A stretch of DNA of 64,000 nucleotides from Penicillus capitatus (taxonomy: Eukaryota; Plantae; Chlorophyta). Below, in pieces: positions 7,709 through 55,839 of this stretch. The stretch spans positions 2,097,288 to 2,161,287 of the forward strand of contig OZ287695.1 in NCBI GenBank assembly GCA_965649825.1, written 5' to 3'. The notes beneath the pieces were generated by a model. The model saw only the letters and a list, made by a program, of their open reading frames with translations. It was not told where the DNA came from and ran no database searches. The position numbers and the translations under genes were made by a program. Position 1 is the stretch's first letter, and each line of letters begins with the position of its first letter.

Positions 7709-7713
7709 GTGGG
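7690..7713 (+). promoter_or_regulatory. Polypurine tract (imperfect)
   Basis: GAGATTAGACAGAAGATAGGTGGG then CCCA directly before the 3' LTR; overlaps the pol stop codon; TGGGCCCA palindrome at 7710-7717. Confidence 0.6.
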
Positions 7714-7717
7714 CCCA

Positions 7718-8024
7718 TGTTGTGTTAAGCCAACACGCCCCTAACAATGAGCTCATCTACTTACACTTGTGTCGATCTCCAAGCGACAGGTCGTAGGTTC
7801 GCTACACCTTCCCATCCACAAATAGACCCGCGGCTCTACGTCACAGATTCCAAGTAGATTCCGGAATCTTCGCAGAATATTCCTTCTTTGTTACTTAAAA
7901 TAAAGTACCCTATAAAAGCTTTGTGAATGTACAGATCTTGTCTTTCGTTTGTAAGGCTTTACGTTTCAAAAGGTTTACGTGCGCCCACCACTCAAATTGT
8001 TCCCATCTAAAACCCTACGCGACA
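7718..8024 (+). repeat. 3' LTR
   Basis: Direct copy of 1053-1359, followed by the TSD copy ACAG at 8025-8028. Confidence 0.98.
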
Positions 8025-32030: not shown

Positions 32031-34244
32031 ATGCTAGACGAGCGAGAAGGAGAACGATCGCTGTTGGAAGAGACCACGCCATCTCAGCGTCGCCATGGCA
32101 TGCGTGTTACTTTCTCTGTGCGCCTTGCCTCGACGTCTTTTCACTCAAGTCGACATTCGCTTTGCAGAATCTCGAGTACTTTCTTCCTTCCAACATCAAA
32201 CGTGGAGAAACGGCCACTGTCCTGAAGAAGATGTCCGGATATTTCAACCCGAATGAAATGACAGCTCTGGTCTGACATGATCTCACCGGAGACAACAACA
32301 CGACGTGAGGACTGCTTTGTGCTAGATGGGCCCTAGCGGATGCGGAAAATCGATTCTGATGGATGTGTTGGCCGGAAGACGTACCCGAGGAACACTGCAG
32401 GGAGCGATTCGATATGATGGACGAACACCGTCACAAGGATTCCTCCACTGGTGTACGGGATATGTCGAGCAGTTCAGCACCTTGATTGAGAACTTGACCG
32501 TGTTCGAGATGCTCATGTACACAGCAGAACTGAAAGTAAAACACCGACGGACCTCGGCAGCATTTGATCCGTCCTTGATTCAGCGCCCGTTGGATGAATC
32601 CTTGTCGAGCAAAGAACAGGCCGTGATGGATTTGATCGACCGTTTGGCACTGACATCGTGTAAAAACAGCCGAATCGGAGATCCGCACTTGGATCGGGGC
32701 ATCTCCGGAGGAGAGGTCACTCGATGCTACACAATAGGGGTCGCCTAGAGAGTGTGTATGGCGGGTAGGGAAAGAGAGTCAACATCGGCATTGGATTGAT
32801 CACGAACCCCCGAGTGCTGTACATAGACGAACCTGTTTCTGGACTCGATTCCTACACAGCAAATGAGGTGAGGCCATGGAATGGAAAAGAGAAGAGAGTT
32901 GGAACGTTTGCTGCACACAGGTGACGGAACTGATCCATAGTCTCGCCTGCGATGGAACCACCGTCTGTGCCACCCTGCATTCCCCAACGCCCTTCACCTT
33001 TCGCCTCTTTGATCGCATTCTTCTGCTCGTTCAAGGAACCATGGTCTTCTTCGGCGGACGAGGTGTCACATCACACGCCGCCAATGAGAGAGGCTGCGAT
33101 CGATGTGAATGTAGAGGAGATCGTTGGGTACTTTGAGAGTCTGGCTGTCGGGTCACGTCATCCCTCCCAGAGTGTTGCTGAATGGTTGACGGAGATCATC
33201 GTCAAGGCAGACCAGGAAGACACAACGCCTGTACTCATTGAAGGCTATCGGCATTCTCAGCTACGTACACAGACAGAAAGCCATACCACGATGTCCTCCC
33301 CCTCTGCCGAGATGCGAGAAGAGAATGGACAGATGGTGCAAGAGAATATCTACAAGCAGAAACCCTTCTGGTTTTCTCTGAAGATACTGATCCGCTACCG
33401 TGCTGTCAAAAATCTCTCGAGTCTTTCTTTCTGGTTGACTCGGAGCATCGACAAGAGCGTCATCGTCCTTCTGCTCTGTACACTCTACTACAGTCTGGGA
33501 GATAACATCACGCCCAACAACTACTTCGAGCTTTCGGCATTGATGTTCATCTGGTCAACATTCTCAGCAACGGGCGCTCTGGTTTATGTCCCTCGATTGG
33601 TGGTCGAACGATGGGTGTTCTATCGAGAGCAGCGCGATGGACTGTATCCTGTGCTCTCGTATTTTCTCATCAAGATCCTCGAAGAGATGATGGTGGCTGT
33701 GGTGCTGTCCGTGCTCTTCTGCTACATTCTGTGGTCTTGCATCCATCTACAGGGCAGTCTCCTACGATTCATACTCACCTTCTTTGGCATGTTTGCCTCC
33801 AGCATTCTACTGTCCTTATTCTTTGGGGCAATTGCGCCCAACATGGACATTGCTAATGCTCTATTCCCCTGCTATATGATGACCCTTATGTTCTATGCTG
33901 GCTATCTGCTGTTGCCTGACGACATACCGAACTACTTGGTCTGGTATTCAAAACTGGATTTCCTTAAGTACTGCTACGGTGCGCTGATGGCAAACCAATT
34001 CAAAAGCGATGTCAAACTGGAAGGAGCAGCAATCTACTTCACACGTAAGCATCTCTGCCATCTCGAATGGTCCATCCACTAAGTGTGATTGTGTGTCTAT
34101 CCAGCGAGGGATTTTCTGGACAACCTTGGTCTGGGCGATTTCGACGAAGATTGGTACGTCGGAATTCTCTATCTCTTTTCGACCGGCTTCGGTATCCTTG
34201 CATACTCGGCCATGCGTTTCGTTAGATACGAGCGCAAGAAATGA
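32031..34244 (+). CDS. ABCG half-transporter (NBD-TMD)
   Basis: Walker A GPSGCGKS, signature ISGGE, DEPVSGLDS, H-loop LHSP, ABC2 membrane domain with ERWVFYREQRDGLY. Confidence 0.95.
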
Positions 34245-38926: not shown

Positions 38927-41900
38927 TCACTGTGTCTTGCATTTCAGTTTATCTGAAAAATCGAACGCTTCTCTCCACAGAGCCTCCACTGCATTCTCCA
39001 CCGTAGCGTTGTCCAAGAATGGCTCCGTCGAAGGCACGATCCGAACTTCACTGACATCTCGGATATTCGAGTATCGACCCTGCGCCAGACGACGCGTATA
39101 CTGCTTGGCCTGTCGAATGACCAGTTGGTAAGGAACGCCAAATCGCATCTTGTGCTTTGGATATTTGAATATCGTGTAATGCTCCATGTAATCGACATCT
39201 AGATTCTCACTCTTTATGTACAGCTCATTATTCTCCCGAATGCCAATGGCATCGATAAAATCTTTTGCCAGTGCATGATCCTCGAGCTTCGTCACCTCAC
39301 TCACCTGCCAATCAAAATAAAATATCTCCGGGGCGGATGAAGATAGCAAACCTGTGTTTTGAGCATGAATCGAATATCGGATTCGCGTCCCTCCACTTCG
39401 TCATGGTGACAGACACATTGTCGTTTGACATCGCTGACGATCCAGCGAATCGGCGCCGTTTCGATGCCGACAAATTTCAGATCGGCATCGTAGCGCGCCG
39501 TCACGACACCCGTTCCTGTCTGCGCCACCACTTTGACGCCTTCTTCCTTATCGCCTTTGTACTGGTCTTCGGGAATATCTGTTAACGAGTTTATCAATCT
39601 CTGTTTCAGAAAGTCGCGTTCTTCATCATCGAAGAAGACAGAAGCGACAAACGACGTGGAAATGAATCCATCATTGGCACGTTCTCCTCTAGGCACACGG
39701 CGAAAGTGACCTGAATCGAACATCGGATCCAAGAAACGTGATTTTCTTCGTTCCAGAGCCTTGAGCAAATCTTCGGTGGTCAGATGCGTGGCATCTTCCA
39801 CAAAAGACTGGGGAGGACTCACAACGTAGCTTCGGCCAAACTTGACTTGAATCTCGCATGGACCGTTGACTTCTGGCGAGTACTGTCTCTGAAAGTGGGC
39901 CAGTTGACGTCTGAAATGCTGTCGGAACTGATCAAAGTTGTCGGTATTGGTAGGATCCACCGCCGAAGTGGCAGGACGATCACGCAAGCGAACGACATAG
40001 AGCCTCTTGTAATCATGCTGTGGATACTTGTAGCCTAAGTAAGGCTCGAGGCGAATGGAGGCATGGGTACCAACTGCCGTTTCCACTAAAAGATTGTGCG
40101 CACCTGTCACATCTTTTGTGCCCCTAGATACACGAAACACCGTCACCTCTTCACCTCTTCAGCCCTATCTTACCGCACGCGCAGTGTCCGGCCCGTTTTT
40201 TGTTGTTCATCAGCCTGTGCATTGAGCATCTCGATCTGTTTCTCTAACAGATAGAGCTCTGCCTCCGTTCCGACGCCTTTGACGATCTTTCCCGGATTCA
40301 AAGCGCTCATTCGAGACTGGACATCGACCCATGCTCCAGATCTCTGATGCAGCATCCTGGTGAGGCCATCCTCATCGCCAACCACGAGACGCGACGCCTC
40401 GAGTTTGATAAAGAAAAGACGTTCGATGGGAACTTTGCTGAGCAAGACGGATGCGTTGACGTGGAGAGACAGGCGATGGGAGGCTTTCTCCATTTCGGCC
40501 GAGAGCAGAGTCAGCATATCAGTCCTTGCTTCATCATTCCATCTCTCCACCTTTAAGGCCTGTAAAAATGCCACAGACATGATCACGTCCCTAATTAGCT
40601 GCTGTGGCAGACTTGTGAGAGTTCTGGATGGAGATCGGCTGGAATCTGAGCCGTCCCCTGTTTCATGAAGGTACACAGGAGACGTCCAACTCGACCAGAC
40701 TCTCCTTCCCACGGCTGATCGCTGATCTCGTCGTTTCGATTGGCTGTTAGGTTTTGATGCAAGCTCTTCCATTCGTTGTCCGTGCCAAAGCAGTCGTTGT
40801 GCAGCGGATCTTCAAAAAATCTCTTGGCTGCTTCCAAGAACTGCCGTGGAGGGATTGGATGCAATTCGCCAGCCTTGAGACAATGATCGATGAACATCAG
40901 TGGCACCAAGTAGTCTGGCAGGAAGAAAACACGACCGCCCACCAATCCTGTCGCCATCATCCATGTGAACAGGATTCTGAGCGCAGGGAAGAGCCACTGG
41001 TGCTTGAAGAAGTACTTCTTGATCACAATCCACTTAACGACTTCGGCTGGATTGGCAGAGAGCCGAGCCTTTGTCTTGGGCAGCCTCTTGAAGACACGAA
41101 CTCTGAGGTGACATTGCTCAGTGTTTAGGTTTTGTGCCGCGAAAAGAGAAGAGCATTCGGATTTCACCCTGTCCAACCGCGTCAACTGATCCTCTTTGCT
41201 CAGGGCGATGTTTTCTGAATCATACACCTGCCGTCTCTTTTTCATGACCAGAATGCACACTTCTCCTCTCTGATCATCGAACAGCAGGAGATGACTGGCA
41301 CCAAAAAGCACGCAGAGAGCAACGCGCTGACAGGTCTCTCCCAGAAAACGTGCCAACATGATATGATGTTCGTAGGCTTTATACAGTTTGCTACACAGCC
41401 ACACATGACGTTCCTCAGGAGAGAGAAAGACAGACGACTTACTCAATCGTCCCGTTGAAAATTTCTTTCACGCTGTCCGAGATTTCGGAGTAAATTGAAC
41501 GCTGCGGTCTCTGTTTGGATGCTGCGTCGCTATAGATCTCGGCCAGAAGATCCTTCAAGATCCAAGGAAAGCTCAAAAAATGTTGCATCTCGTTGCCTAT
41601 GTGCACGGATCGCATATCTCTTCGGCAAAAGGCATACGACTTACCCACAGAATACTGATCTCCGTAACAAGAGGCATAGGCAGCATAGTACCAAGCAGAA
41701 GCTTTCTTCTTCTCCTCGACTCTGCCATCTGCCTCATCCAGTCGCGAGTCGGTGAAAAAGATCGCTTTGTATTTCGTCTTGATCTTCTCCAACATAAACT
41801 TCACGTTCTTCCTCACGTCATCCAGTTCGCTTTCGAGTCTCGGGTGGTACGTCGAGATGACACCCGACCACATCTCAGCCTCCGTCTCAATGCCGTACAT

Positions 41901-44900
41901 GCGCATGATCGTCAGGATCTCTTGGTTGTACTGTTTGAAGATCCGGTGTGCCTCAGTGATGTAGTCTTTATATCCCTCAACCTTGAAGGCCTCGTCTGGA
42001 TGTGGTCGGCTGCTCTGCTCAGCCGTTGCTGGATCGGTGGTGGCCATCATGTACTTGTTGCATTCGCGAAACATCTGCCCCAGGACATTCATGGACGGAT
42101 ACGACGGTTTGTCGACTTTCATCATGAAATCTGGATACTTAGTGAGTTCAGATTTGATATGCGATGGAAGATGTGTCCAGCTGCCAGTCTTTGGAGCATC
42201 GACGGCCTTTGCATGCAGCTCGGAAAGATCCAAACAGATTTCGCTCTCGAGTCCTCGCTGATCTGCCAGAGCCTTGTGCGTGTTGTCGATCATACCTAAC
42301 GTATCGTTCTCGATAAAAGCGCAGATGTAATCGGCAATGTGGCGCAGCCCGATCTGATCGGGTCTCTCCTCCTGCTTTGCTCCAGTGTAATCCATGGGCT
42401 CCTTGATCGGGATCGTTGGCAAGAGGCGCATATCCCAGATGCAATGATACTGATCTCCATCTAAATCCGATCCGGATAGTTCATTGGGATGCGGTCGCGG
42501 TCCTTTCTGAGGAAAAACGACACAGTCGACAAGATGACGCAGCTGTGGAATATCTTTTCCTTCAAGGGTGCGAACATCTCCTGGATGAATGCACGGGTTC
42601 TTCATGATGACGATCGTGGAGGTAATGACACGGCGAGCGACACCCGGTTTGTCCAGGTCTTCCGAAATCTGGATGAAAACCTGACCGCTCTCTAGCACCC
42701 CTTCTTCATCCATCACCCCAATCAACACACGGCCCTTATCTTCATCCAGACGGACTCGGGATCGCTCTCTCATGTCTTGCATCTGAAATCTACGCCAGAT
42801 GAAACGGGATGCATCGTAAGAGGAGGACGTTGCGATGTGAAGGATCGGACCGATAGCTCGCTTTCATGATGTTGCGAAAGAATGGATCGGAAGTGAACTG
42901 GAATCGCACTCGTTGAAGCCGATTGATCTCTCTGGACACTGTTGCCTGAAGAGCCTTCACTGCCGCATCCTCCTCCACAAACATCTTCCCCATCTGGACA
43001 ATCTTGTTCTTCAACAGGTCCATGAAGACATCGTCTCCCACTCCCACGTTGCTCAGCAACATGATCACCTGTATTGCCAGAAACGAAGCTGCATAGAAGC
43101 TGATGTGACGGGTTTTTACCTGTTGATTGAGATGCAGAGGAAGCGGACGTGAGAATTCGAGCACTTCGATACCTTTGCTGTCGGAAGGATACTTCAGCAT
43201 GCTATGTCGCACCACCAGATCAGAGGTATAGCCCTTTCTTCTGAAGAAATCATCATCCCAGACAGACACCATACCTTTGCATCCGCCGATTCTGATCTGA
43301 AAGGCAGACGGGATCGACGAATGCTCCAAGCACTGTTTCTCCTTCACCTAATACCAACAGTCATCGGCCGGCGGTGCAGCTCAGGGCAGTTTACTTTCAA
43401 CGCCAGAGAGGCTGAGATCAATCCAACACCATCGGAGAAACAATAGTCGCCAGCTTCCACATCCGATTCCGTATAGTAGTGCGCCACAGAGACGGTGTGT
43501 ACGGATGTTGAAAAAGCCAAACCCAGTCGCGACATATAACGTGGCACTTGCGTAATCCCTGAAGATCAGACATACCAGCCGTTATGACAACACACGTGAA
43601 AAAGCAACGCACGCGTGAGATCTCCAATTCCGTCGCGTATCTTTTCGGCGATGCAGCATCCATCATCTCGGATGAAATAAGAAGAATGCGCGCGTATCTG
43701 ACTGTTCGATGCTGCCAAGTAGACATACTGATGTGGTCCGATCTTTATCCCATTCATCAAGATGTCGCGGATTCGATTGGTGATATGCGGCAGATCTCCA
43801 TAAAGACTCGTCAGATTGTCGCAGTTCTCATCGCGAATGCCAACGCGAATGAAGATCTCTGCATTGTACTCACGCACGATGCGATTCGTCTAGCAACACA
43901 CTCATCACACAGCGGCCACGATTTGAAGCCTCTGTCCTACCTGGATCAGATCTGGTTCGTAGAAACGTAGCGAGGTGGGCGTGATGATAATTCTCTTCAT
44001 GTACGCGTGATTTGAACTTGGTGGCCTGATCTCTGTATCAGGGATGGCGGATTTCCATGCACGTTCCATAAACTGAACGGGATCACAGAAGAGCTTCTTG
44101 GACATCACTCTTGCAAGCTCGTATATCGTTCGAATCGCTTCGTTCTCTTGCATGGAGTTCAGAATTTGATAGAATCGATCATCCATACGTTCCATAACGA
44201 ATCCAGCCGAGGAAGTGAGACAACGCATGGCATAGTGCACTTCGGGATTCTGGCTGTGGGCAGAGCACTTGGTAAGATCCAGCCCCTCTTCGTGTCCGAG
44301 AAAGGGCGCTGTACCGAAGGTGGTCTGCATGGAGGTGAAGTAGACGGTCACTCCAGAGGATTCCAGCAGCTTCAACACTTCACGTACTCGGTGATCGATG
44401 AGATTGTGCTGCGTAGGAGCTCGTGGATTCGGTATTTCCAGTTTATAAGTGAAGCAGTTGGCAAAAACGTGACAGCTGTTTGGCTCGCCATACCCATAGA
44501 CACGCTGCGACGTCTCTCTGCCTTCGTTATCGGACTGCGACATTCGACTCAAACGGGGTGTTTGCGAAAAAGTGAGATAAAGAGTGAGAACAGAATCTTC
44601 TGTATTGGCGTTCTCCTGAAAATCCACCACGGCAAAATCGCGCAGATCTGCAAAGGATGCTTCTATTTGCAGCTCGTCGTTCACCGTGATGACAATTCGG
44701 TCGAATCCTCGTTCCAATCGCAGACTGCTGGCTTGGCCCAGTCGCATCTGCTGAACAAACGTTCGCTGCCATTTGAGCGATCCCACGAACGTCTGATGCA
44801 AACTCAGCCTCAACGCTGTCGACCTCGGAAAGTAGCTCCGTCGATTCAGCAAACTCGTCCAGATATTGAACAGCTCGGAATGGAAGATGGGCGACGTGAA

Positions 44901-47892
44901 CAGACCCAGGATGCTCTTCTCAAAGCGATGGGCGTTTTCTCGATCGCTGTTTTCGTTGAGCGTCAGCAAAGCCTCCGGAAAATAGTGCGTGCCGACGGCG
45001 TTCTCAATCTTCAGCTCTTTGTCGATCCATTCGTGGATCTGGACTTCGGGATGGGTGATTTCGATCGCCTTTTTGATATGGTCTCTGGCACGTTGATACA
45101 TTTTGTCGTCCTGAACGAAGATGGCGAAGCGCACGGCGACTTCGACCTTCTCCGATTCGTCCTCGTCGAGAAATGGAAGCTCTTCTTGACTGGCATCCAC
45201 ATCGACTTGCTTCATGATATCCAGCATCTCCTGCAGTTCTGCTTCTGAGATTCCGTTCGCCTGTGGCCCTGCCTCCTCTTTCTGAATGATCCTCCTTCCG
45301 GTATCTTCCTCCAGATCCAGTGGCACCTTGCTGTGGGATGTCATCTGATCGAAATGATACCTGTTCTTCATCATCAGCTGGATCACATCGGCCTGTGTCT
45401 GCATACAGCTCAGGTATAACTGCTGCCTGTTCTTCTCGGCCTCGCTCTTGCATATGATATAGAATTTGCCATCGGCTGCTCGACAGGCGCGTCCTCGACT
45501 CTGAATAAACTGCCGCAGGTTTTCAGGCGCTTTCATACGGAGCACCATATTGCAGGAAGGCACATCGAGACCTTCTTCCAGAATGGTCGTGGTGACCAGC
45601 AGTTTCGTCTGCCCACGTCTGAAATCGTTCAGAATCTCTTGTTGCTCTTCGAGGCTCAGTCCATCCCCACAAATACCTCTGCCCACAATGACTTGAGGAT
45701 TGAGCGCCGTCTGGATAAGATTCAGCTGCGCAAAACAGCTACAGAGTTTGCGTGCCGTTCGACGCATATCCACGAACACCAGAATCCGCGTATCTTTCCT
45801 GTGCTCTTCATAGTGCTCTTGGATCATTTCGATCATTCTCTTGCACTTGTTGGAAAGGAGATGGTGTTTATAGACATCGCTTTTGGACTCCCGTTGGACC
45901 TTCTGAAAAAGACTCGCGTAGAGAGGCTGACCGTCAAAACTCTTCTTGTAACTAAACACACAAAACGTGTTGCCATGTAGAAGTGATCTTGTCTCGTAGA
46001 GGATGGTATGTACCCATACAGAGCTTCTTTCTTTCTTTGCTCCTGTCCTGGTGCCGGATCTTCAATACTGTAGAACACCTTCTTCAGCTGTTGCATCGCC
46101 ACGTCATGACCGATCACATTGTTGACCTCATGAACTGCCAAGATCTGATTCATGTGATCTCTCATCGCATAGCTACGCAAAGAGAGAGCATCCATCGCTC
46201 ATGGCCCTGACTGTTGTCAGAGACGCACATACCCATAGTAGATATCCTCTGTGCGGCTACGGAATCGCTCCTTGTCGCGAGCTTCGTCCAACTGACCTTC
46301 AATTTTTCTCAGTTTTCCACGAAGTTTGTTGGTATCGACCTCGCGATCGTCTCCCGTCAAGAGACCCTCCAACGAACCAAACAGCGGGGCAATATCTATC
46401 AGACGATGCTGTGTCGCTCGAGTCACTTCACGCATGTAGTCATCCAACTGTTGCTTGAACTCAAACTCTTTCTGACCAGGATCGACAATGAACGCCCAAT
46501 CATGCGTATGTCGCATGCCGTTGTCATACGGATCGTTTTTGCAAGGGAAGCAAGGATGGCAATGTAGCCGCATACCCATCTCCCTAATGTCTTTCTCAAC
46601 TGACTGCGCTGTTGCCGTGCTCTCTGCATTGTCCAGAGGAGATGCCGTCATTCCCATGATTAGAGGTCTCGAGGACAGCTGGACATTTTTATCGAGCACT
46701 CGGCCAAGGAGCTCTGCATAGGGACTGTCTCCCTTTGTCTCGTGCGCTTCGTCCAAAACCAAACAGCAAAGATCCTCGACCCTTACCGTGCTGATCTCCA
46801 TCATTGCGTTCATACAGGCGCACGTACTGACTAGTATATCGTACTGAAATTCGCCAATGATCTGCACCGAGTGTGTCAGGTCGCTTGGAAAACAGTCATT
46901 GCGAGAGATCGCACTTTGAGATTCTTCCTTCTCTGGTCCGGATGCATCTGGCCGAAGACGGTGACGACTTTGGCAGCAGAGAGTTCGGTCTTGAGGACAT
47001 GGGATTGCTGCCCGACGAGATGATTGGTGTTGACCACAAAGGCTGCCACTTTGTGTGGATTGATATGTAGCATCGCTCTCAAGACGCCAGCCGCCACCAG
47101 TGTCTTGCCTGATCCTGTTGGCAGACATAGCAGACTGTTCTGCTTGAGGCAGAAAGTCAACATCTCCATCTGCAAGACGCCATCTCACACAAATGCGAGC
47201 GTCACCTGTCACATCACAGACTTGATAATTGCGCATCTTCGTTGCTGTGAGATGCTTCAATGTGTCATCGGATGTCCTGTCGACATCGACGAGAAACGTT
47301 GGATGAATAGGTCGACCATCACGGCTGTAAAACTTCCGGCCTGCCTAAACGTCACATCACTGGCTCTAAATGATCATTCGCATGCCATGACAGACAGACC
47401 CGTCTCAAAAAGTCCTTCTGCGAGATACGGGATACACCACATTCTACCAGTGCCGGCAGCACTTCTTTCCACTTGTCCTCGTATCTCTCCAGGCCATTCG
47501 GAAACTCGAACACGACGTATTTTGGACGGATCTCGTCGTAAGCATTGGCCGTGATGGTATCCGCTAGACAGACGCCGATCTTTCCTTCGCAGTTCCTGAC
47601 GACGCGCATTGGCATCTGACGTTTAGTAGGAGCGAGCATACCTGCAGTGTAGCTTCCAACCAAAATCGCCCTTTCCCGTTTCGTGGTTTTCGCGTCGTTC
47701 GGTCGTTTTGCTCCGCTTGAGTGCGATCTGTATTGGCAAGAGGCATCAATCAGGCTTTGCAAAAAGACGTCTCGATGTTGAGGGCACTTCGGGAACGACG
47801 ACGAGTTTGTTTTCGTTTCCCAAAATCGCGAGCTGCTCAAACGTGTACAGCTCTGCGCGACACTGGCGACATTTGATCTTGCCAGGCGACAT
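38927..47892 (-). CDS. RDR: Multidomain RdRP: RLR-CTD, DExD/H helicase, RDR, NTase-like, KH-like, CYTH/TTM-like (about 17 exons)
   Basis: Consecutive ORF pieces join in phase across about 45-62 nt GT-AG introns. RNYQ, LPTGSGKT (47101-47124), LDEAH (46742-46753), MTASP, EEGLDVPSC, QSRGRA; SDGVG, QIRIGGCKG, KNPCIHPGD, SGSDLDGD (DLDGD at 42453-42467). Confidence 0.9.
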
Positions 47893-49419
47893 GAGTGAAG
47901 CGACACAGACGAAGACGAACGCACAAACACCTTAAGACACTCAAGAGGTGTCGCTGTCACGGTACAGTACCAAGCGGATGCCGGACAAAAGAACGGCCGC
48001 CTGTTCAATCGCTGATGGCGACCCTGTCCCATCGCCCTCTCGCTGGACAAGCGACCATCCACCAACCTCGCAGCGTCAACGGACGGAGAGACCGGTCGCA
48101 TTGCGAGGATCAGGAATGAATTGCACACGTCCGATGTTACACTTCGTTCGATGGAGTGATGATGTGACACATCACACTATGCCATTTTCTTCAGCGACAA
48201 GTGACATCGACCATCGCCTTTGCCTAGCCACTGATCTCGGCGATACGTCACTCGATGATATTCCATGCCTTCAAACCTTGACAGAGATTTTCGCCGTGAC
48301 CTCGATGCAAAGAGTGAGATAACGTGTTACCATGATTTATCTTGGGAGCAGCAACATACTGCTGTCAGGGATGGGACGCCCTCTTCTTCAAAAACGTCTT
48401 GATATAGACACGTTCGAACCTCCAACGTACAGCAGCTAGAGAACGGTCACTCATTTGCTGTCAGGCGAAAGAGTGAGACAGAAACGCACTTTTTATCCGT
48501 TGAGATATGAGATGTCCAGGCAGCGCCCATGTCCATCTGTAGACTGCGCATCATACGACTCTGCATCACACACAAGTGAGAATGACACCATTCCGTATCG
48601 CCTGTTGTTGTCACCAGCACAAGGAAGGGACTGGTGCCGAGAAGTCTGTGTCGAATATACAGTGTCGAGTGCAAGAGGATTCTACGCAACATCCGTACAG
48701 CGTTTCTCACTCTTTTGAAAGAGTGACCTGAGCAAAGGAGCACCCGAAGATCCCATCTGTCCAGACAGGATCTTTAAGACACTCTAGCGCGATCGCAACA
48801 TTCCATATGACTCGCAGAAAAGTGTGAGAAAACCTGTTCATTCTTGATCCAAGGGAACAGCACTTTGTAACTCGCCATCACCAAACATGCCATCTACAAC
48901 ATTCCTGACGCGATTCTCACTCTTTATCGTCTCACACTTGAAGGTGTGTCTGCGAAGGTCCATCTCGGATGCGATGTGCATGTCGTATGTGATAGTCCTG
49001 GTAAGCTTTCTCAATGTATAGGTGAATGCGCTCCGTCTGATCTTGCAGTACATGATACTCACTGTCACACTTTTCCATCATCTCACTCTTTATTTCAGCA
49101 GATCGCCAACTTGCATCGCGACCGGATACCTCGAATCCACCAGCGTCGATTCTGTCTCTGCAGCCATGGTCGCAACTTTGGGAAATACAGATCCAGCCAG
49201 TGCGACGACGCTTCATCTGTCGAACGGCCGTTTCCTGACGCCGATGACGGTATACATCGCAGTGCCGTATGGCAGCGCGCATCTCTGTCGGCAGGTCGAC
49301 GATGGGAGAAACGCAGATGTCGCCATGCCCCACGGATCATCATCATTTGCCAAGATCTGTTGCGTTTTGCACGTCGAGTTGATTCGTCTCTGCATCCAAC
49401 CCTCGTCGCTACCATCCTC

Positions 49420-50184
49420 ATGGCGCAGCTTCTCACGTCGTCTTTTTCTTGTGCCGGTCGTCGCGTCGCGACGTCGTCTCTCAAGACAACCCACAACTAC
49501 CGCCGCTCGGCATTCAACGGCAAGGCCCTGCGCAGTACATCCCTCCTCCGACGCGCCGCCGAACGCGGTCGGCTCTCCGTCAATGCCGGGTGCGGGGAGC
49601 ATTCGCCTCAAGTGGGAAACGTTGCGCCAGATTTCGCCGCCCAGGCTGTCTTCGATCAAGAATTCGTCGAGACGACACTCTCTCAGTACCGCGGAAAATA
49701 CGTCGTTCTCTTCTTCTACCCTCTGGATTTCACCTTCGTCTGTCCGACTGAGATCACTGCCTTCTCAGATCGCTACTCAGAATTCTCTGCCCTCAATGCC
49801 GAAGTCCTGGGCGTCTCTGTCGATTCACAGTTCAGCCATCTGGCTTGGATCCAGACAGATCGCAAAGAAGGGGGTTTGGGCGATTTGGCGTATCCCTTGG
49901 TGGCCGATCTCACCAAAGAGATTTCCAAATCCTACCAAGTCCTAACCGAAGAAGGCGTTGCCCTCCGTGGCCTCTTCATCATCGACAAAGAAGGCATCGT
50001 TCAGCATGCCACCATTAACAACCTTGCATTCGGTCGCAGTGTGGACGAGACCTTACGTACACTCCAGGCCATTCAATACGTACAAGAGAATCCAGACGAA
50101 GTGTGCCCGGCTGGATGGAAACCGGGTGACAAGACAATGAAACCGACGCCGAAGGAATCGAAAGAGTTCTTTGCTGCTGTGTAG
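49420..50184 (+). CDS. Chloroplast 2-Cys peroxiredoxin (BAS1-like), intronless
   Basis: [15 protein letters not shown] and EVCPAGW motifs; transit-peptide-like N-terminus from ATG 49420. Confidence 0.97.
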
Positions 50185-50245
50185 AGGGAACGGTGATTTT
50201 TGTAAGATCCGTCGATTGTGTCGTACCGTTTCGTTGGAAGGCACT

Positions 50246-52449
50246 ATGAGGCGTTTACTTGTATACGGCACGTTGCTCATGGCCTCGCTCTGTACGGCCT
50301 CGTCTCCCGAAGACGAACCGTCCGTCGCGAAGCGGTGCGAAGACATTGGCAAAGCGCCAAGAGCGGAGCGATGTCGTTTGGTCCGCAGTCTCTGCTCAGA
50401 GGAGAGTCGCAAAGGGACACTGTCACTGGACTATCTCTCAGCTTACTACTGTCACATCGATGGAAATGGCTACCGTGTGCAATTGCTGTTCTGGACGATG
50501 CTGTGTTTTGTGGGAGCCATCCTGTTTTCTCTCCTGGGCGATACGGCTGAGAAATATTTTAGCCCTGCGCTGACGCAGATTTGCCAACAGGTGCCTAAGA
50601 TGCGACCGAGATTTGCAGGAGTGACCGTTCTGGCATTTGCAAATGGCGCTCCGGATCTTTCTGCGACGATCAATGCGATCAAAACGTGCAAATTTAATCT
50701 TTCCTTGGGAGCGCTGACGGGTGCTGGCATGTTTGTCAACTGTTTTGTGGCGGGATGGATTATTCTGATCTCAGGAGGGGCCAGATGTCGAGGGGCAACG
50801 ATCCGCGATGTGACCACGTATTTTCTGACGATCTTTGGTGTCTTGATGGCATTGCTGGTGCATCGCATGGGCATTACGGTCATCGTCTTGGCCTTTCTCC
50901 TTTACGGTGGCTTTGTTGCCATTGTCTTCGGTGCCGATGAATGGCACGAACAGGGACGCCCCGATTTCTGGTCCAAGCCCATCGGCCGCATCGCCTCCAG
51001 TTTTCGATACGGTGAAACGATGGAGGATGCATGGATGACATCGACGACAGGACCTGTCTGGGCGACCTTCGATGACGACGGCGAGCAGCCCTCTGCCATC
51101 GCTTCCGAACAATTGCTGTTGACAGCGACCCGTGATGAGGAAGAACTCATGAGACGACATCTGCCGACCGTATGGGCACAGCTCTCACCCAAGGAGTATC
51201 GTCAACAGGCTCTGGCCGAGATGGCGGGATCGGATGACGATCTGTACGACTACCCACTTGATGACAGACTGATGGCGGAAGCCACGTCAGAAGGGCCTTC
51301 TCAGATGGAGAACCTTCCAGATGATTCATCTCCTCAGCCTCTTGGCGCCGACGTCATGCCTTTTGAAACGGAACACCCTTCGGAGACCGTACCATGCACA
51401 GGAGGTGCGTCAGGCGATCATCTGTCGCTGTCACAGACAGCGTGTGCGCACAGGTGTGTTTGCACAGTATCCATGGCTTATGCCTATGTGGGCGACGCTT
51501 TTGATGGACGACAAGCCGGACAGGGATAGCATGATTTTGACAAAGATCATTCTGGCAGTGCGTCTGCCGTTCCTGACATTGCAACGGGCAACGATTCCTC
51601 TGACCAGTCAAGAACACTTTTCCAATTTCTGGCTTGTCACCTCCATTGCCCTATCACCCTTCATAGTCCTCATTTACTTTAACTTCTCTGGCTGGCTCAG
51701 CTTCTTCCTGGCTACTCTCCTGGGAATAGTCCTCGCTGGAGCCATCTACTTTGCCACGAAAGGTGATTGCTCTTTCCTGTGTGGATCGATGAGGTCTCCC
51801 TAAATGTGTAGGATCGTCCAGACCACCTGTCTGGTCATTTGGGACGTCGTGGCCAATAGGCGCCTCGCTGATTGCCCTGTACGGATTGGCAATTGGTATC
51901 TTTTGGATCGATATCCTCGCGGGAGAGCTCGTCGATCTGCTGTACTGTGCCGGAACCGTGACCGGAATACCGGAAGCCGTATTGGGACTGACGGTCCTGG
52001 CATGGGGCAATTCGATTGGAGACTTCTTTACGAACAAAACCATCGCCAAAGCCGGCAAAGGAAACATGGCATTGACTGCCTGCTATGCCGGACCCGTCTT
52101 TAACATGCTGATGGGACTGGGACTGGGTTTCATCTCATTCTTTGCCACACAGCATCGGTCCTCCGCCTCCCTTCATGCCGGACCCCAAGTCACACATTTC
52201 TCATACTTCTCACAAAGTGTGAGCGGCTTTCTGTATGACTAGGTGATTCTGGGCTGTATCTGTCTGCTCCTTCATGCAGCCGCCGTGGTCATCATCGGCA
52301 TTCGAAAAGGATTCCGACTTCCCAGCCGTTTCGGATATTTCTCTATGGGTGTTTATCTTGTGTACTTATGCCTTGCTGTTTCGCTTCAGTTCCTCATCGG
52401 AGAGCGAGAAAACGATGATGCCGCTCAATGCTCGGATCTTTCATCCTAA
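50246..52449 (+). CDS. Cation/Ca2+ exchanger (CCX/NCLX family)
   Basis: alpha1 GVTVLAFANGAPD; alpha2 GLTVLAWGNSIGDFFTN, ACYAGPVFN; signal peptide. Confidence 0.93.
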
Positions 52450-53758: not shown

Positions 53759-55839
53759 ATGGCTCAAAACGGTGCCGGTGCGGGAAAGGTTGACCCTTCC
53801 CTCCTGGAAGACCAGTCTCATGAACCACGGGCCAAAACGCTCGAAGGATTGCAGAAACTTCAGAAGAGCGCCGCGACGGGAGAATCGGCGGCGAAAGGAG
53901 CGACGGCGTCCATTTCGTCGTCTCTCCGTTCCGAAGTCCGCCAAGCGGGGCCCAAAATTGTCAAGGGCAATATGTACCGTGACGTGGAAGAAGCCGATCC
54001 GGAATTCCTCCTACACCAAGCGCCGACAAGTGACGTCGGACTCAAGCCCGTCACGGTCTACCACAACCTCTCACCGGCGGAGCTATACGAACATGCGCTT
54101 AAGTACGAACCCGGAACGCATATCGTTTCTTCGGGTGCTCTCGCGACGATGTCCGGTAAGGGCGGCGCATTTTCGACGCGTCCGTGTCGGAGAAGGGACG
54201 GTTTGTAGGGGCAAAGACAGGACGGTCTCCCAAAGACAAACGTGTGGTACGGGAGCCGACCACGGAGCAAAATATTTGGTGGGGCGAAGGTTCGCCGAAC
54301 TATGAGATGGATGAACATACGTTCATTGTGAACAGAGAACGGGCGATTGACTATCTCAATTCCCTCGATCACCTCTACGTGTTCGATGGATTTGTCAACT
54401 GGGTCGAATCCTGTCGCTACAAGATTCGTATCATCTGCACCCGTGCCTACCATGCACTGTTCATGTGGAACATGCTTATTCGTCCAACACGCGAAGAGCT
54501 CAATGGCTTTGGAGAGCCAGACTTCACCATCTACAATGCAGGTGGGCATCGCATGTCGAATGACTGGGTCTGTTGTGATGTGACTGTGTCCTATCAGGAA
54601 TGTTTCCGGCGAATCGCTATACAAGTTATATGACATCCTCAACATCGGTCGATCTCAATATGAAGCGCAAGGAAATGGTGGTGCTCGGTTCTCAGTATGC
54701 TGGTGAGATGAAGAAAGGAGTTTTTACGGTGATGAACTATGAGATGCCCCTCAGAGGCATTCTCTCCCTCCATTCTGGCTGCAATGTGGGCGAGAAGGGT
54801 GATGTCTCATTCTTCTTCGGTCTCTCAGGTACTGCTGCCACGCATCTGCATGGACCCATACGAGTAATTTTTTTGTACGGTTAGGGACTGGAAAGACGAC
54901 GCTTTCGACAGATCCTGTCCGTCCCTTGATCGGTGACGATGAGCATTGCTGGTATGACGATGGTGTTTTCAACATCGAAGGCGGCTGCTATGCCAAGTGC
55001 ATTAATCTCAGAGAGAGCAGCGAGCCCGAAATCTACAGGGCCATTCGCTTTGGCACGGTGTTGGAGAACGTTGTCTTCTCCGAAGACACCCGCGAGGTCG
55101 ATTTCGACGGAGGTCAGATCACGGAGAACACCCGTGCCTCCTATCCAGTGACCTTCATCGACAACGTGAAGATTCCGTGCATCGCTGGTCATCCTAAGAA
55201 TGTGATCCTGTTGTGCTGCGATGCCTTTGGTGTCTTGCCTCCTGTGAGCAAGCTGACAAAGGACCAAGCCATGTACCATTTCATCTGCGGCTATACAGCC
55301 AAGGTGGCCGGTACCGAAGTGGGAATTGTGGATCCAGAAGCAACTTTCTCAGCATGCTTTGGCAGTGCATTCTTGATGTGGCATCCCATGAAGTATGCTG
55401 TCATGCTGGAAGAGCGTATGGCGAAACATGGTACCACGGCTTGGCTGGTGAACACAGGATGGGCTGGCGGTAAGTACGGAGTCGGCAAGAGAATGTCCAT
55501 CAAATACACCCGTGCTATTATCGATGCCATTCACTCTGGAGAACTGCTTGAATCAGAATGCGTCGAAACACCCTACTTCAAGTTCCAGGTGCGCAGACGT
55601 GCCGTTTAGACGACCCGGTATGACGGGGTGTGGCTGTATAGGTGCCGCAGACGTGCGCAGGCGTGCCTCAAGACATTCTGAATCCGAATGTCGCTTGGAA
55701 GGATCAGGAAGACTTCGACAACACTTTGAAAAAATTGGTGGACATGTACATGAAGAACTTCAAGAAGTTCGAGGGAGGCGGCGGCTTTGTGTCGGAAGAG
55801 ATGGCCAATAGAATTCTGGAGGCCGGTCCTCACCTCTAA
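53759..55839 (+). CDS. PCK1: Phosphoenolpyruvate carboxykinase (ATP)
   Basis: [27 protein letters not shown]|[31 protein letters not shown]. Confidence 0.98.

What the first reader, a model, noticed from the sequence alone, without database searches (positions are those of the whole stretch)
38927..47892. One-polypeptide RNA sensor-amplifier: RLR-CTD + helicase + RdRP + pseudo-TUTase + KH + TTM-like
Seen: every junction between the ORF fragments can be closed in phase by a short GT-AG intron (for example IE/D|KLYK across about 41390-41441, ELSQ|ALKV, VR|GTKD, KTQ|VSEV), giving about 2,700 aa. Known: Dictyostelium RrpA-C carry a Dicer-like helicase N-terminal to the RdRP; S. pombe RDRC (Rdp1, Hrr1, Cid12) and Tetrahymena RDRCs (Rdr1 plus Rdn nucleotidyltransferases) assemble similar parts from separate proteins. 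Inference: here RNA-end sensing, translocation, dsRNA synthesis and product-end binding are joined in one protein, possibly a Dicer-independent antiviral or anti-transposon amplifier. I know of no description of this full architecture but cannot check databases.
Basis: partly seen in the sequence, partly recalled or inferred. Interest (0 to 1): 0.93.

Follow-up and report, generated by a model that had tools for sequence, protein, structure and literature searches.

The report
All-in-one RNA-silencing amplifier protein
One 2,688-residue protein of a probable green alga joins an RNA-end sensor domain, a Dicer-like helicase, an RNA-copying polymerase, an inactive RNA-tailing enzyme, a KH domain and a triphosphate-tunnel domain; other organisms supply these as separate partners of the RNA-silencing amplifier, and I found no description of this conserved fusion.

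Summary
Window 47892-38927, minus strand, holds one gene of 18 exons. Its 17 GT-AG introns are 45-62 nt long, and the product is 2,688 aa. A syntenic orthologue (L006) keeps an intact 8,076-nt reading frame under the same exon map. All frame-breaking indels lie in introns, and dN/dS is 0.07-0.15 in every region. A relative (P0003) reads from the RdRP to the C-terminus as one uninterrupted 1,355-codon ORF.

All six domain calls hold:
- N-terminal RIG-I C-terminal-domain-like zinc module: below threshold in the window, significant in distant family members.
- Dicer/RLR-type helicase.
- Full cellular RdRP with DLDGD.
- GLD-2/Cid1-type nucleotidyltransferase fold with the catalytic triad lost (E-x-C and R). 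The triad is intact in a distant clade.
- KH fold with a non-canonical loop.
- Triphosphate-tunnel barrel. It is closest to trypanosome RESC1/RESC2, which are inactive binders of 5'-triphosphate RNA, and it lacks the ExE metal motif.

Most likely it is an RDRC-type siRNA amplifier in one chain, with end-binding modules. That function is inferred. Helicase-RdRP fusions are known; the N- and C-terminal additions appear undescribed. Named relatives are all unannotated Bryopsidales proteins. Verdict: new variant of a known kind.

The parts
38927..47892 (-). Whole coding region: 18 exons, 17 GT-AG introns of 45-62 nt, 2,688 aa. Exons (high-low): 47892-47769, 47710-47661, 47615-47400, 47344-47222, 47169-46915, 46861-46233, 46172-46014, 45951-43941, 43889-43613, 43558-43395, 43347-43120, 43068-42851, 42789-41645, 41596-41443, 41390-40613, 40559-40174, 40123-39352, 39304-38927 (stop 38929-38927).
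   Evidence: assembly, single frame. (orthologue L006: only 3-nt indels in exons, frame-breaking indels in introns). (dN/dS 0.10 overall). (L007 and L008 colinear over aa 1-2688).
47415..47892 (-). N-terminal RIG-I C-terminal-domain-like zinc module (aa 1-125, three exons). Cys pairs are C8/C11 (47871-47860) and C67/C74 (47591-47568); a KWK motif lies at 47477-47463.
   Evidence: Pfam RIG-I_C-RD is the best hit but below threshold: 17.2 bits, E 0.006, residues 5-110 on profile 2-105 of 117. Homologues L008 and L007 score 21.2 and 20.2 bits. hhalign of the near-clade profile against the distant clade gives probability 89.5%, E 2e-6 over 117 columns. The distant-clade domain passes the Pfam cut-off (33 bits against 25.6, E 7.5e-8).
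45408..47239 (-). Dicer/RIG-I-like (duplex-RNA-activated) SF2 helicase, aa 166-700. Q motif MRNYQ, motif I PTGSGKT (47121-47101), motif II DEAH (46753-46742), motif III TASP, motif VI QSRGRACR (45503-45480).
   Evidence: Pfam DEAD 1.8e-17, ResIII 8e-14, Helicase_C 1.9e-24. Best PDB matches are ancestral Dicer helicase AncD1D2 (1.3e-39), LGP2, Dicer, RIG-I, MDA5 and Dicer-related helicase.
43986..45407 (-). Region between helicase and RdRP catalytic domain (aa 701-1174). It has no family match. Its last ~60-90 residues already align with the N-terminal part of Arabidopsis RDR2.
   Evidence: No Pfam hit. The PDB RDR2 match starts at about model aa 1088-1112. dN/dS is 0.13.
42060..43985 (-). Cellular RNA-dependent RNA polymerase domain PF05183 (aa 1175-1728), with catalytic DLDGD at 42467-42453.
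   Evidence: Pfam RdRP 4.6e-150, profile 1-582 of 582. PDB RDR2 7roz 1.4e-113. Motif position.
41445..42059 (-). RdRP 'head' region (aa 1729-1917) leading into the C-terminal module.
   Evidence: PF26253 RdRP_head is precomputed on the homologous ORFs of relatives. The region aligns with RDR2 up to about aa 1905.
40613..41389 (-). Pseudo-nucleotidyltransferase (aa 1919-2177): a GLD-2/Cid1/TUTase fold with the catalytic carboxylates lost. LFGAS...GEVCILV (41308-41246) replaces hG[GS]...DxD, and KARLSAN (41071-41051) replaces the third Asp.
   Evidence: The family profile hits GLD-2 (6.9e-10), T. brucei TUTase, CutA, Cid1, TUT4 and Trf4 in PDB. The AF2 model has pLDDT 88.8 and pTM 0.88. Foldseek returns TbTUT4, GLD-2, MEAT1, TUT1, TUT7 and RET1 at E 4e-5 to 4e-3. 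Distant members P0018 and P0048 carry Pfam MTPAP-like_central/NTP_transf_2 with an intact SD[IV]DL motif.
40191..40430 (-). Type I KH fold (aa 2221-2300) with a non-canonical acidic loop, VVGDEDG (40385-40362), in place of GXXG. It is preceded by a long helix.
   Evidence: AF2 topology is beta-alpha-alpha-beta-beta-alpha: E45-51, H53-59, H63-74, E77-81, E91-97, H99-123. Foldseek finds hnRNP K KH3, PCBP2, FUBP1 and IMP1 with target TM 0.6-0.75. The family profile hits IGF2BP KH domains at 6.5e-6.
38930..40123 (-). Triphosphate-tunnel (TTM)-like beta-barrel (aa 2306-2688). The strand EIQVKFGRSY (39855-39826) sits where the Cet1 ExExK motif does, but the second Glu is Gln. The conserved WxVxDVKR (39444-39421) and DIRF (39381-39361) strands are also here.
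   Evidence: AF2 model: pLDDT 76, pTM 0.67. Foldseek PDB: RESC1/RESC2 (8cdp, 8fn6) at E 8e-12 to 1e-9 with target TM 0.5-0.6; RNA triphosphatases Pct1 (1.3e-5) and Cet1 (7e-5); YgiF. Foldseek against viral models finds giant-virus mRNA 5'-phosphatases/capping enzymes.
41391..41442 (-). 52-nt intron joining RdRP to the C-terminal module. Its GTAAGT donor overlaps the in-frame TAA that would otherwise end the RdRP ORF.
   Evidence: This intron is absent in the relatives L001, L007 and L009, where the junction is continuous ORF. Window and L006 differ by 1-nt and 2-nt indels inside it.
43069..43119 (-). Hidden in-frame, stop-free 51-nt intron inside the RdRP domain.
   Evidence: L006 has 1-nt and 3-nt indels here, and P0003 lacks the 17 residues.
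41597..41644 (-). Hidden in-frame, stop-free 48-nt intron (GTAAGT...CATAG) in the RdRP head.
   Evidence: L006 has a 2-nt deletion here.
47616..47768 (-). Two N-terminal introns (47768-47711, 58 nt; 47660-47616, 45 nt, with a TACTAAA branch-like motif) flanking the 50-nt exon 47710-47661.
   Evidence: Each intron carries a 4-nt indel against L006, while the exon between them has none. With both removed, Pfam RIG-I_C-RD becomes the top hit; earlier N-terminal models gave nothing.

Best explanation
This is one spliced nuclear gene for a 2,688-aa protein. It is a complete RNA-dependent-RNA-polymerase complex (RDRC-type siRNA amplifier) in a single chain.

Shown by sequence and predicted structure, the order of parts is:
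1. An RLR-CTD-like zinc module.
2. A Dicer/RIG-I-type helicase with ATPase motifs I, II, III and VI present.
3. A cellular RdRP with DLDGD.
4. A GLD-2/Cid1-type nucleotidyltransferase fold whose three catalytic carboxylates are replaced.
5. A KH fold with an acidic loop.
6. A triphosphate-tunnel barrel without the ExE metal-binding pair.

Inferred mechanism:
- The CTD-like module and helicase find and hold an RNA end or duplex and move along the template. RLR CTDs recognise RNA ends, and DRH-3 assists nematode RdRPs.
- The RdRP copies the template, starting de novo, so the product carries a 5'-triphosphate.
- The C-terminal trio holds RNA ends rather than modifying them. The tunnel domain would clasp the 5'-triphosphate of the new strand, as inactive RESC2 does for guide RNA.
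- The dead transferase and the KH domain would grip a 3' end or single strand.
- In a distant clade of the same family the transferase keeps its DxD...D triad. It probably still tails RNA there, as Cid12 and Rdn do in trans.
For: Gene model and single chain:
- the fragments assemble into one frame.
- only three 3-nt indels in 8,067 nt of exon, against 18 indels (12 frame-breaking) in 899 nt of intron.
- dN/dS is 0.07-0.15 in all eight regions, with dS 0.41-0.73.
- gapless alignment to the continuous ORF P0003 across five junctions.
- P0003 is a genomic, uninterrupted 1,355-codon ORF.
- L007 and L008 are colinear over aa 1-2688. In L007, RdRP to NTase-like is one matched stretch (HSP), and KH to TTM is another.

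Domains:
- Helicase.
- RdRP.
- CTD-like.
- NTase fold and lost triad.
- KH.
- TTM-like.

RESC1/RESC2 are TTM-fold proteins that lack two of the three metal-binding Glu residues, and RESC2 binds the 5'-triphosphate of guide RNA (PMC10201420).

DRH-3 helicase, the RdRP RRF-3 and the phosphatase PIR-1 work together in nematode 26G-RNA synthesis (PMC13650160).

That S. pombe RDRC is Rdp1+Hrr1+Cid12 and that Tetrahymena RDRCs are Rdr1+Rdn is from my own knowledge; I did not check it here.
Against: - No transcript, small-RNA or biochemical data exist for this organism, which is itself unidentified.
- The window's CTD-like module is below the Pfam cut-off (17.2 against 25.6 bits). A plain HMM of the distant clade does not score it (-2.4 bits). 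Its structure could not be predicted here.
- The KH loop is acidic (GDEDG), which argues against canonical nucleic-acid binding through that cleft.
- The tunnel assignment rests on an AF2 model of moderate confidence (pLDDT 76) and 9-15% identity. I could not inspect which residues line the tunnel.
- The similarity to RESC1/RESC2 may reflect shared fold only.
- No Argonaute or Dicer context is known for this genome.
Confidence: 0.6

Rival explanations
1. The tunnel domain is an active RNA polyphosphatase. It would trim the 5'-triphosphate of RdRP products to a mono- or diphosphate so they can be loaded or diced. This is the job PIR-1 does in trans in nematodes.
For: The fold matches the Cet1/Pct1 RNA triphosphatases and giant-virus mRNA 5'-phosphatases. 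The first acidic residue of the beta-1 motif is often kept (E/D), and basic residues are conserved in FGR, DVKR and DIRF. PIR-1 acts downstream of RRF-3 (PMC13650160).
Against: The ExExK pair is not conserved. The window has ExQxK, and relatives have F, R, L, N, S or A at the second position. In Cet1, single mutations of these Glu residues inactivate the enzyme, and RESC1/RESC2, which lack them, are judged inactive (PMC10201420). The best structural matches are the inactive RESC proteins, by six to seven orders of magnitude in E-value.
Confidence: 0.12
2. The C-terminal module (dead transferase + KH + barrel) is a protein scaffold or dimerisation/regulatory platform and does not bind RNA ends.
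For: The catalytic residues of both enzyme-like folds are lost and the KH GXXG loop is acidic. RESC1/RESC2 barrels dimerise through a swapped hairpin (PMC10201420).
Against: All three domains are RNA-handling folds, and they sit directly after an RNA polymerase. They are under purifying selection as strong as in the polymerase (dN/dS 0.07-0.15). Basic strand motifs are nearly invariant across the family. Distant members keep an intact transferase site in the same position.
Confidence: 0.18
3. The locus makes two proteins. A helicase-RdRP would end at the TAA at 41441-41439, and a separate C-terminal protein would come from an internal promoter or alternative splicing.
For: The RdRP frame does meet an in-frame TAA exactly at the donor site, so intron retention would truncate the protein there. 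No transcript data are at hand.
Against: The next ATG would follow within about 70 nt, leaving no room for a promoter or UTR. In L001, L007 and L009 the same junction is uninterrupted ORF. The intron has a GTAAGT donor, the standard length of 52 nt and frame-breaking indels against L006. Distant members also encode RdRP+NTase+KH+TTM in one ORF (P0018, P0048).
Confidence: 0.07
4. The protein is mainly an innate-immune RNA sensor of the RIG-I kind that signals, rather than an RNAi amplifier.
For: It has an RLR-type helicase plus a CTD-like module.
Against: No CARD or other signalling domain was found by Pfam anywhere in the protein. More than half of the chain is polymerase plus RNA-end modules. 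The same helicase type works with RdRPs in nematodes and is fused to RdRPs in Dictyostelium, oomycetes and cnidarians.
Confidence: 0.05

Closest known systems
RDRC complexes: S. pombe Rdp1-Hrr1-Cid12; Tetrahymena Rdr1 with Rdn1/Rdn2 (from my own knowledge, not checked here)
   Same: The same three activities are brought together: a cellular RdRP, an SF2 helicase and a Cid1/GLD-2-type nucleotidyltransferase.
   Different: Here they form one polypeptide. The helicase is Dicer/RLR-type with a CTD-like module. The transferase is catalytically dead in this clade. A KH domain and a triphosphate-tunnel domain are added.
Helicase-RdRP fusions of Dictyostelium (RrpA-C), peronosporomycete oomycetes, Hydra and Nematostella (PMC4791657)
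   Same: DEAD/Helicase_C lies N-terminal to PF05183 in one protein. That paper places those helicases in a clade apart from the Dicer helicases.
   Different: That paper reports only DEAD + Helicase_C + RdRP. No CTD-like N-terminus and no C-terminal NTase-KH-TTM module is described. I could not test whether those proteins have them.
C. elegans RdRP modules: RRF-3/EGO-1/RRF-1 with DRH-3, and PIR-1 downstream (PMC13650160)
   Same: A Dicer-related, RIG-I-like helicase assists an RdRP, and the 5'-triphosphate of the products is handled by a dedicated factor.
   Different: In the nematode all are separate proteins. PIR-1 is a phosphatase of another fold (from my own knowledge). Here the 5'-end module is a TTM-like barrel that is probably non-catalytic.
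Trypanosome RESC1-RESC2 (GAP1/2), PDB 8cdp and 8fn6 (PMC10201420)
   Same: These are the best structural matches of the C-terminal barrel (E 8e-12, target TM 0.5-0.6). Like them, the window's domain has a TTM fold without the metal-binding Glu set. RESC2 binds RNA 5'-triphosphate.
   Different: Identity is 9-15%. RESC proteins are stand-alone mitochondrial heterodimer subunits. No sequence-level homology was shown, and no binding was tested here.
RIG-I-like receptors (RIG-I, MDA5, LGP2) and Dicer helicases
   Same: The helicase family is the same, and the zinc-binding CTD family PF11648 is the best match of the N-terminal module.
   Different: The CTD-like module lies before the helicase, not after it. 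There are no CARDs and no RNase III/PAZ domains. The window's module is below the Pfam threshold.
GLD-2 / Cid1 / TUT4/7 / trypanosome TUTases (non-canonical poly(A)/(U) polymerases)
   Same: The fold and family profile match. Distant family members keep hG[GS] and DxD...D.
   Different: The window has E-V-C for DxD and Arg for the third Asp, so it is not expected to transfer nucleotides.

Membership tests
Cellular RdRP (PF05183, RDR family) | Full-length match to the family profile | tested here: met
   Profile 1-582 of 582, 501.5 bits, E 4.6e-150. RDR2 7roz 1.4e-113.
Cellular RdRP (PF05183, RDR family) | Catalytic DxDGD loop, whose last Asp is essential (PMC4791657) | tested here: met
   DLDGD at aa 1593-1597, window 42467-42453. 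It is conserved in P0001, P0003, P0025 and P0048.
Dicer/RIG-I-like (duplex-RNA-activated) SF2 helicases | Closest relatives by sequence are Dicer/RLR helicases | tested here: met
   AncD1D2 1.3e-39, LGP2 1e-29, Dicer 1e-26, RIG-I 1e-24, MDA5 2e-23, DRH 1e-14.
Dicer/RIG-I-like (duplex-RNA-activated) SF2 helicases | ATPase motifs I (GxGKT), II (DExH) and VI (QxxGRxxR) | tested here: met
   PTGSGKT, DEAH and QSRGRACR are present.
Dicer/RIG-I-like (duplex-RNA-activated) SF2 helicases | Helical insertion domain (Hel2i) between the two RecA lobes | tested here: inconclusive
   About 200 residues separate the DEAD and Helicase_C matches. One MDA5 alignment runs through query residues 305-522. No structure was predicted for this part.
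RLR C-terminal domain (PF11648 RIG-I_C-RD) | Score above the Pfam gathering cut-off (25.6 bits) | tested here: not met
   The window scores 17.2 bits (E 0.006), L008 21.2 and L007 20.2. It is the top hit with near full-length coverage. The distant family member L004 does pass: 33 bits, E 7.5e-8.
RLR C-terminal domain (PF11648 RIG-I_C-RD) | Homology to bona fide members by profile-profile comparison | tested here: met
   hhalign probability 89.5%, E 2e-6, 117 of 131 columns. A plain HMM search failed at -2.4 bits.
RLR C-terminal domain (PF11648 RIG-I_C-RD) | Four zinc ligands in two Cys pairs | tested here: inconclusive
   C8/C11 align with the first pair in all members. C67 is invariant. C74 is present in the window, L006 and L008 but is Val in L007. 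Metal binding was not tested.
RLR C-terminal domain (PF11648 RIG-I_C-RD) | Position C-terminal to the helicase | tested here: not met
   The module is N-terminal to the helicase in the window, L004, L002, L007 and L008.
GLD-2/Cid1-type nucleotidyltransferases (TENTs) | Pol-beta-type palm plus PAP-associated fold | tested here: met
   The family profile hits GLD-2 at 6.9e-10. The AF2 model has pLDDT 88.8, and Foldseek returns only TUTases/PAPs at the top.
GLD-2/Cid1-type nucleotidyltransferases (TENTs) | Catalytic triad DxD...D and the hG[GS] motif | tested here: not met
   The window has FGAS...G-E-V-C and Arg for the third Asp. P0003, Ostreobium and Caulerpa are likewise degenerate. P0018, P0048, P0040 and P0047 are intact.
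Type I KH domain | beta-alpha-alpha-beta-beta-alpha topology | tested here: met
   AF2 secondary structure. Foldseek hits to hnRNP K, PCBP and FUBP1 KH domains with target TM 0.6-0.75. Profile hit to IGF2BP KH at 6.5e-6.
Type I KH domain | GXXG loop between the two helices | tested here: not met
   The window has G-D-E-D-G. The family consensus is G-[SNKA]-E-x, with a conserved Glu.
Triphosphate tunnel metalloenzymes (Cet1-like / CYTH) | Antiparallel beta-barrel tunnel fold | tested here: met
   Foldseek: RESC1/2 8e-12, Pct1 1.3e-5, Cet1 7e-5, YgiF 9e-3. Giant-virus mRNA 5'-phosphatases score 3e-4. This is a predicted model only (pLDDT 76).
Triphosphate tunnel metalloenzymes (Cet1-like / CYTH) | Metal-binding Glu pair of strand beta-1 (ExExK; Cet1 E305/E307) and the third Glu (E496) | tested here: not met
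   The strand before FGR reads E-I-Q-V-K in the window, and the second position varies freely across the family. The equivalent of E496 could not be assigned without coordinates.
RDRC (RdRP + helicase + nucleotidyltransferase acting together on one template) | Physical and functional coupling of the three activities in small-RNA amplification | not testable with these tools
   The fusion shows physical coupling. Activity and small-RNA output need experiments.

The most novel reading that the evidence does not exclude
The enzyme would then clasp the 5'-ppp end of the strand it has just made, working as a self-contained, Dicer-independent factory of triphosphorylated secondary small RNAs. By extension, the guide-RNA-handling pair of RNA editing (TUTase plus RESC1/2) would descend from an ancient RdRP accessory module.
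Probability: 0.2. Interest if true: 0.85.

Novelty: new variant of a known kind. Interest (0 to 1): 0.72.

Why it matters
Gene fusions are 'Rosetta stones': they show which activities work on the same substrate.

This fusion ties a cellular RdRP in cis to an RLR-type end sensor and helicase, to a TUTase/PAP module, and to a tunnel domain of the kind that binds RNA 5'-triphosphates. It supports two ideas. The first is that partnerships known piecemeal are facets of one ancient machine: Rdp1-Hrr1-Cid12, Rdr1-Rdn, and RRF/EGO with DRH-3 and PIR-1. The second is that handling of the product's 5'-triphosphate is an integral step.

It offers a compact, single-gene system for structural and biochemical work on RdRP loading, initiation and product hand-off. 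It also provides a natural active/inactive pair for the transferase: the distant clade against the algal clade.

It gives RESC1/RESC2, which had no characterised relatives by sequence (PMC10201420), a candidate structural relative outside kinetoplastids.

It also shows RNA-silencing amplifier genes in siphonous green algae (Ostreobium, Caulerpa, Bryopsis), where they are filed as unnamed or generic proteins.

Tried and rejected
1. First gene model: it began with the long frame-1 ORF 48176-47400. That ORF gave no Pfam or PDB hit. It was replaced by ATG 47892 plus two introns after comparison with L006. A one-intron alternative (47768-47642, 127 nt) was rejected because the 50-nt exon between the two introns has no indel and resembles the basic linker of other members.

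2. Raw ORF fragments and the single-sequence C-terminus against Pfam and PDB found nothing. Family profiles and predicted structures were needed.

3. A plain HMM of the distant-clade CTD against the window scored -2.4 bits, not significant. Only profile-profile comparison and the corrected exon model gave signal.

That fold is therefore untested.

5. A scan for further hidden in-frame introns found no convincing candidate beyond the two adopted.

6. The idea that the C-terminal part is a separate gene, a pseudogene or a transposon remnant was rejected. The grounds are continuous ORFs in relatives, dN/dS of about 0.1, and synteny with the same neighbours in L006.

7. Literature searches for the full architecture found only the helicase+RdRP fusion.

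8. The organism could not be named. The contig names look to me like those of long-read metagenome assemblers (my impression), and the only named relatives are Bryopsidales.

Full report
**What is in the sequence**

The window is eukaryotic nuclear DNA with about 50% G+C. On the minus strand between 48176 and 38927 lies a chain of stop-to-stop open frames that change frame every few hundred bases. Pfam on the raw fragments already showed DEAD/ResIII, Helicase_C and four consecutive pieces of the cellular RdRP family PF05183. The first 270 and the last roughly 900 residues gave nothing.

**Gene model**

Each junction can be closed in phase by a GT-AG intron of about 50 nt.

The spliced product gives an end-to-end RdRP match (profile 1-582 of 582, 501 bits) and continuous DEAD and Helicase_C matches. 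Wrong splicing would not produce this.

The N-terminus was first mis-modelled as a long frame-1 ORF. Two introns follow it, at 47768-47711 and 47660-47616.

The final model has 18 exons and 17 introns of 45-62 nt. The CDS is 8,067 nt and the protein 2,688 aa.

**Independent validation of the model**

- Orthologue L006. A syntenic locus from another assembly has the same peroxiredoxin, Na/Ca exchanger and PEPCK neighbours, and it aligns over the whole gene. Exons are 88.6% identical and carry only three indels, each of 3 nt. Introns are 77.5% identical and carry 18 indels, 12 of them frame-breaking. All 17 AG acceptors are conserved.
- Hidden introns. The L006 comparison also exposed two in-frame, stop-free introns that no ORF inspection could show: 43119-43069 and 41644-41597.
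- Intact frame. The exon map projected onto L006 gives an intact 8,076-nt ORF.
- Selection. Nei-Gojobori dN/dS is 0.07-0.15 in each of eight regions. It is 0.09 in the N-terminal module, 0.13 in the transferase-like domain, 0.07 in the KH domain and 0.15 in the barrel, with dS of 0.41-0.73.
- Full-length relatives. Two more distant relatives are colinear from residue 1-3 to residue 2687-2688: L008 at about 65% and L007 at about 47% amino-acid identity. L007 has few introns, so RdRP through the transferase-like domain is one matched stretch (HSP), and KH through the C-terminus is another.
- Continuous ORFs. P0003 is a 1,355-codon uninterrupted ORF on a genomic contig, with an OPRTase-like gene starting about 130 nt downstream (my reading of the sequence). 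It aligns to the window protein at 45% identity without gaps at five exon junctions, and it ends at the same place. In L001 the RdRP|C-terminal junction is also continuous ORF.

The one-polypeptide claim is therefore as well supported as it can be without transcripts.

**Domains**

1. *Helicase (aa 166-700).* The best PDB relatives are the reconstructed ancestral Dicer helicase (1.3e-39), LGP2, Dicer, RIG-I, MDA5 and nematode Dicer-related helicase. Motifs I, II (DEAH), III and VI are present.

2. *RdRP (aa 1175-1728 plus head to 1917).* The closest solved structure is Arabidopsis RDR2 at 1.4e-113. DLDGD is present.

3. *N-terminal module (aa 1-125).* With the corrected exons, Pfam RIG-I_C-RD becomes the top hit with near full-length coverage, but it stays below threshold at 17.2 bits. 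L008 scores 21.2 bits and L007 20.2. A distant member of the same gene family, on a TARA scaffold (L004), has the domain in the same place, directly before DEAD/ResIII. There it passes the cut-off at 33 bits, E 7.5e-8. Exon-ORFs of that clade carry precomputed PF11648 hits. A profile of the window clade aligns to a profile of that clade over 117 columns, with probability 89.5% and E 2e-6. The first Cys pair, one Cys of the second pair and a W-K motif are conserved. I call it RLR-CTD-like. Its fold could not be predicted here.

4. *Transferase-like domain (aa 1919-2177).* An exhaustive HMMER search with the C-terminal 770 aa found 49 cluster representatives among 1.84 billion. Distant ones (P0018, P0048) carry Pfam MTPAP-like_central/NTP_transf_2 at the equivalent position, after an RdRP. 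The family profile hits GLD-2 (6.9e-10), trypanosome TUTase, CutA, Cid1, TUT4 and Trf4. The AF2 model (pLDDT 88.8) finds only TUTases and non-canonical PAPs. In the window the triad is E-V-C plus Arg. In P0003, Ostreobium and Caulerpa it is also degenerate. In P0018, P0048, P0040 and P0047 it is an intact SD[ILV]D[LV]...D. The window-clade domain is therefore a pseudo-enzyme derived from an active one.

5. *KH domain (aa 2221-2300).* The AF2 topology is beta-alpha-alpha-beta-beta-alpha. Foldseek finds hnRNP K, PCBP and FUBP1 KH domains, and the family profile hits IGF2BP KH domains at 6.5e-6. The GXXG loop is replaced by G-D-E-D-G, and the family consensus is G-x-E-x.

6. *C-terminal barrel (aa 2306-2688).* The model has pLDDT 76 and pTM 0.67. 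The best PDB matches are trypanosome RESC1 and RESC2, at E 8e-12 to 1e-9 with target TM 0.5-0.6. RNA triphosphatases Pct1 and Cet1 and E. coli YgiF follow. In the viral library the best matches are giant-virus mRNA 5'-phosphatases and capping enzymes. The strand that precedes the invariant F-G-R reads E-I-Q-V-K, which resembles the Cet1 ExExK motif with its second Glu lost. That position varies freely in the family.

According to PMC10201420, RESC1/RESC2 are TTM-fold proteins that lack two of the three metal-binding Glu residues, and they are therefore judged inactive. RESC2 binds the 5'-triphosphate of guide RNA in its tunnel.

**Relatives and distribution**

The family is rare. Only 49 representatives scored E <= 1e-3, and many of them are single exons. 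All named members are siphonous green algae of the order Bryopsidales:
- Ostreobium quekettii CAD7703173.1 ('RNA-dependent RNA polymerase') and CAD7696503.1.
- Caulerpa lentillifera g8969.t1.
- Bryopsis sp. KO-2023 GMH35081.1.

None is annotated for the extra domains.

The divergent neighbour gene is a 2-Cys peroxiredoxin, which I read as plastid-type because of its long N-terminal extension. That fits a green alga.

A second, distant clade occurs in marine metagenomes (L004), in the Logan read-archive assembly SRR30399214 (L002) and in long ENA metagenome contigs of about 400 kb that hold its exon-ORFs. It has the same order of parts with an active-looking transferase. Its organism is unknown.

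**How it most likely works**

The order and nature of the parts, and the state of their catalytic motifs, are shown. The rest is inferred.

- The CTD-like module and the helicase load the enzyme on an RNA end or duplex and translocate.
- The RdRP synthesises the complementary strand de novo, which gives a 5'-triphosphate product.
- The barrel holds that 5'-ppp end, as RESC2 does.
- The dead transferase and the atypical KH domain hold a 3' end or single strand.
- In the distant clade the transferase probably still adds untemplated nucleotides.

This is the RDRC principle in cis. The separate-protein versions are Rdp1-Hrr1-Cid12 and Rdr1-Rdn (from my own knowledge) and RRF-3 with DRH-3 and PIR-1 (PMC13650160).

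The rival explanations each get less weight, for the reasons given in their entries. They are an active polyphosphatase, a pure protein scaffold, two separate products, and a signalling sensor.

**Comparison with what is known, and novelty**

DEAD + Helicase_C + RdRP in one protein has been reported for Dictyostelium, peronosporomycete oomycetes, Hydra and Nematostella (PMC4791657). That part is known.

I found no description of three things: an RLR-CTD-like module placed before the helicase, a TUTase/PAP domain fused to an RdRP, or a KH plus RESC/TTM-like barrel at its end. I could not check whether the published helicase-RdRPs also carry these modules.

I rate the finding as a new variant of a known kind. 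It is of good interest because the fusion links several separately studied partnerships and offers a testable role for 5'-triphosphate handling.

**Limits**

- There are no transcripts and no biochemistry, and the host is unidentified.
- The N-terminal fold was not modelled.
- The tunnel residues were not inspected in three dimensions.
- The RESC similarity is at fold level, with 9-15% identity.

Noticed in passing
window 1314-7708 (+): Two long intact ORFs (1,133 and 977 aa) carry a retroviral-type aspartyl protease, reverse transcriptase, integrase zinc-binding and integrase core domains. I read this as a Ty3/gypsy-like LTR retroelement. It coincides with strongly positive AT skew at 2001-8000. 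LTRs were not looked for.
   Followed up: partly
window ~49393-50184 (+): The divergent neighbour of the gene is a 2-Cys peroxiredoxin (AhpC-TSA 3.7e-41, 1-cysPrx_C). It has an N-terminal extension of about 70 residues rich in Ser, Arg and Ala, which looks like a plastid transit peptide. The same gene lies next to the orthologue in L006.
   Followed up: partly
window 50171-51529, 54926-55609 (+); L006 2003-7371: A Na/Ca exchanger and an ATP-dependent PEPCK follow the peroxiredoxin in the window, and the same genes follow it in L006. Synteny therefore extends over at least 15 kb between the two assemblies.
   Followed up: no
window 43119-43069 and 41644-41597 (-): Some introns here have lengths that are multiples of three and contain no stop codon, so they are invisible to ORF reading. 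They would add 17 and 16 spurious residues. Gene models of short-intron genomes built from ORFs alone may carry such insertions.
   Followed up: yes
window 28400-28471 (+) and 28001-30000: There is a lone tRNA-Phe (GAA). The surrounding 2 kb has the most extreme skews of the window (AT skew -0.26, GC skew -0.15), which remain unexplained.
   Followed up: no
window 25654-26454, 32952-34082, 14805-15542 (+): Exon-sized ORFs match RRN3 (Pol I initiation factor), an ABC-2 type transporter and an AAA_11 (Upf1-like helicase) domain.
   Followed up: no
L002 1027-8359 and neighbours: The distant-clade gene is almost intron-free. It is called as four ORFs: 103 aa, 305 aa, 1,851 aa and 121 aa; the second and third overlap by a few bases, as do the third and fourth. 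It lies beside ankyrin/Sel1-repeat genes and a Ppx-GppA phosphatase. The overlaps could be tiny introns or assembly frameshifts. The organism is unknown.
   Followed up: no
window 44148-45248 (+): A 366-aa ORF runs antisense inside the largest exon of the gene. It is most likely a by-product of the codon composition of the sense strand. It was not examined further.
   Followed up: no
L006, introns matching window 47660-47616 and 43394-43348: The orthologue has GC instead of GT at two donor sites, so it may use GC-AG introns or slightly shifted donors there.
   Followed up: no
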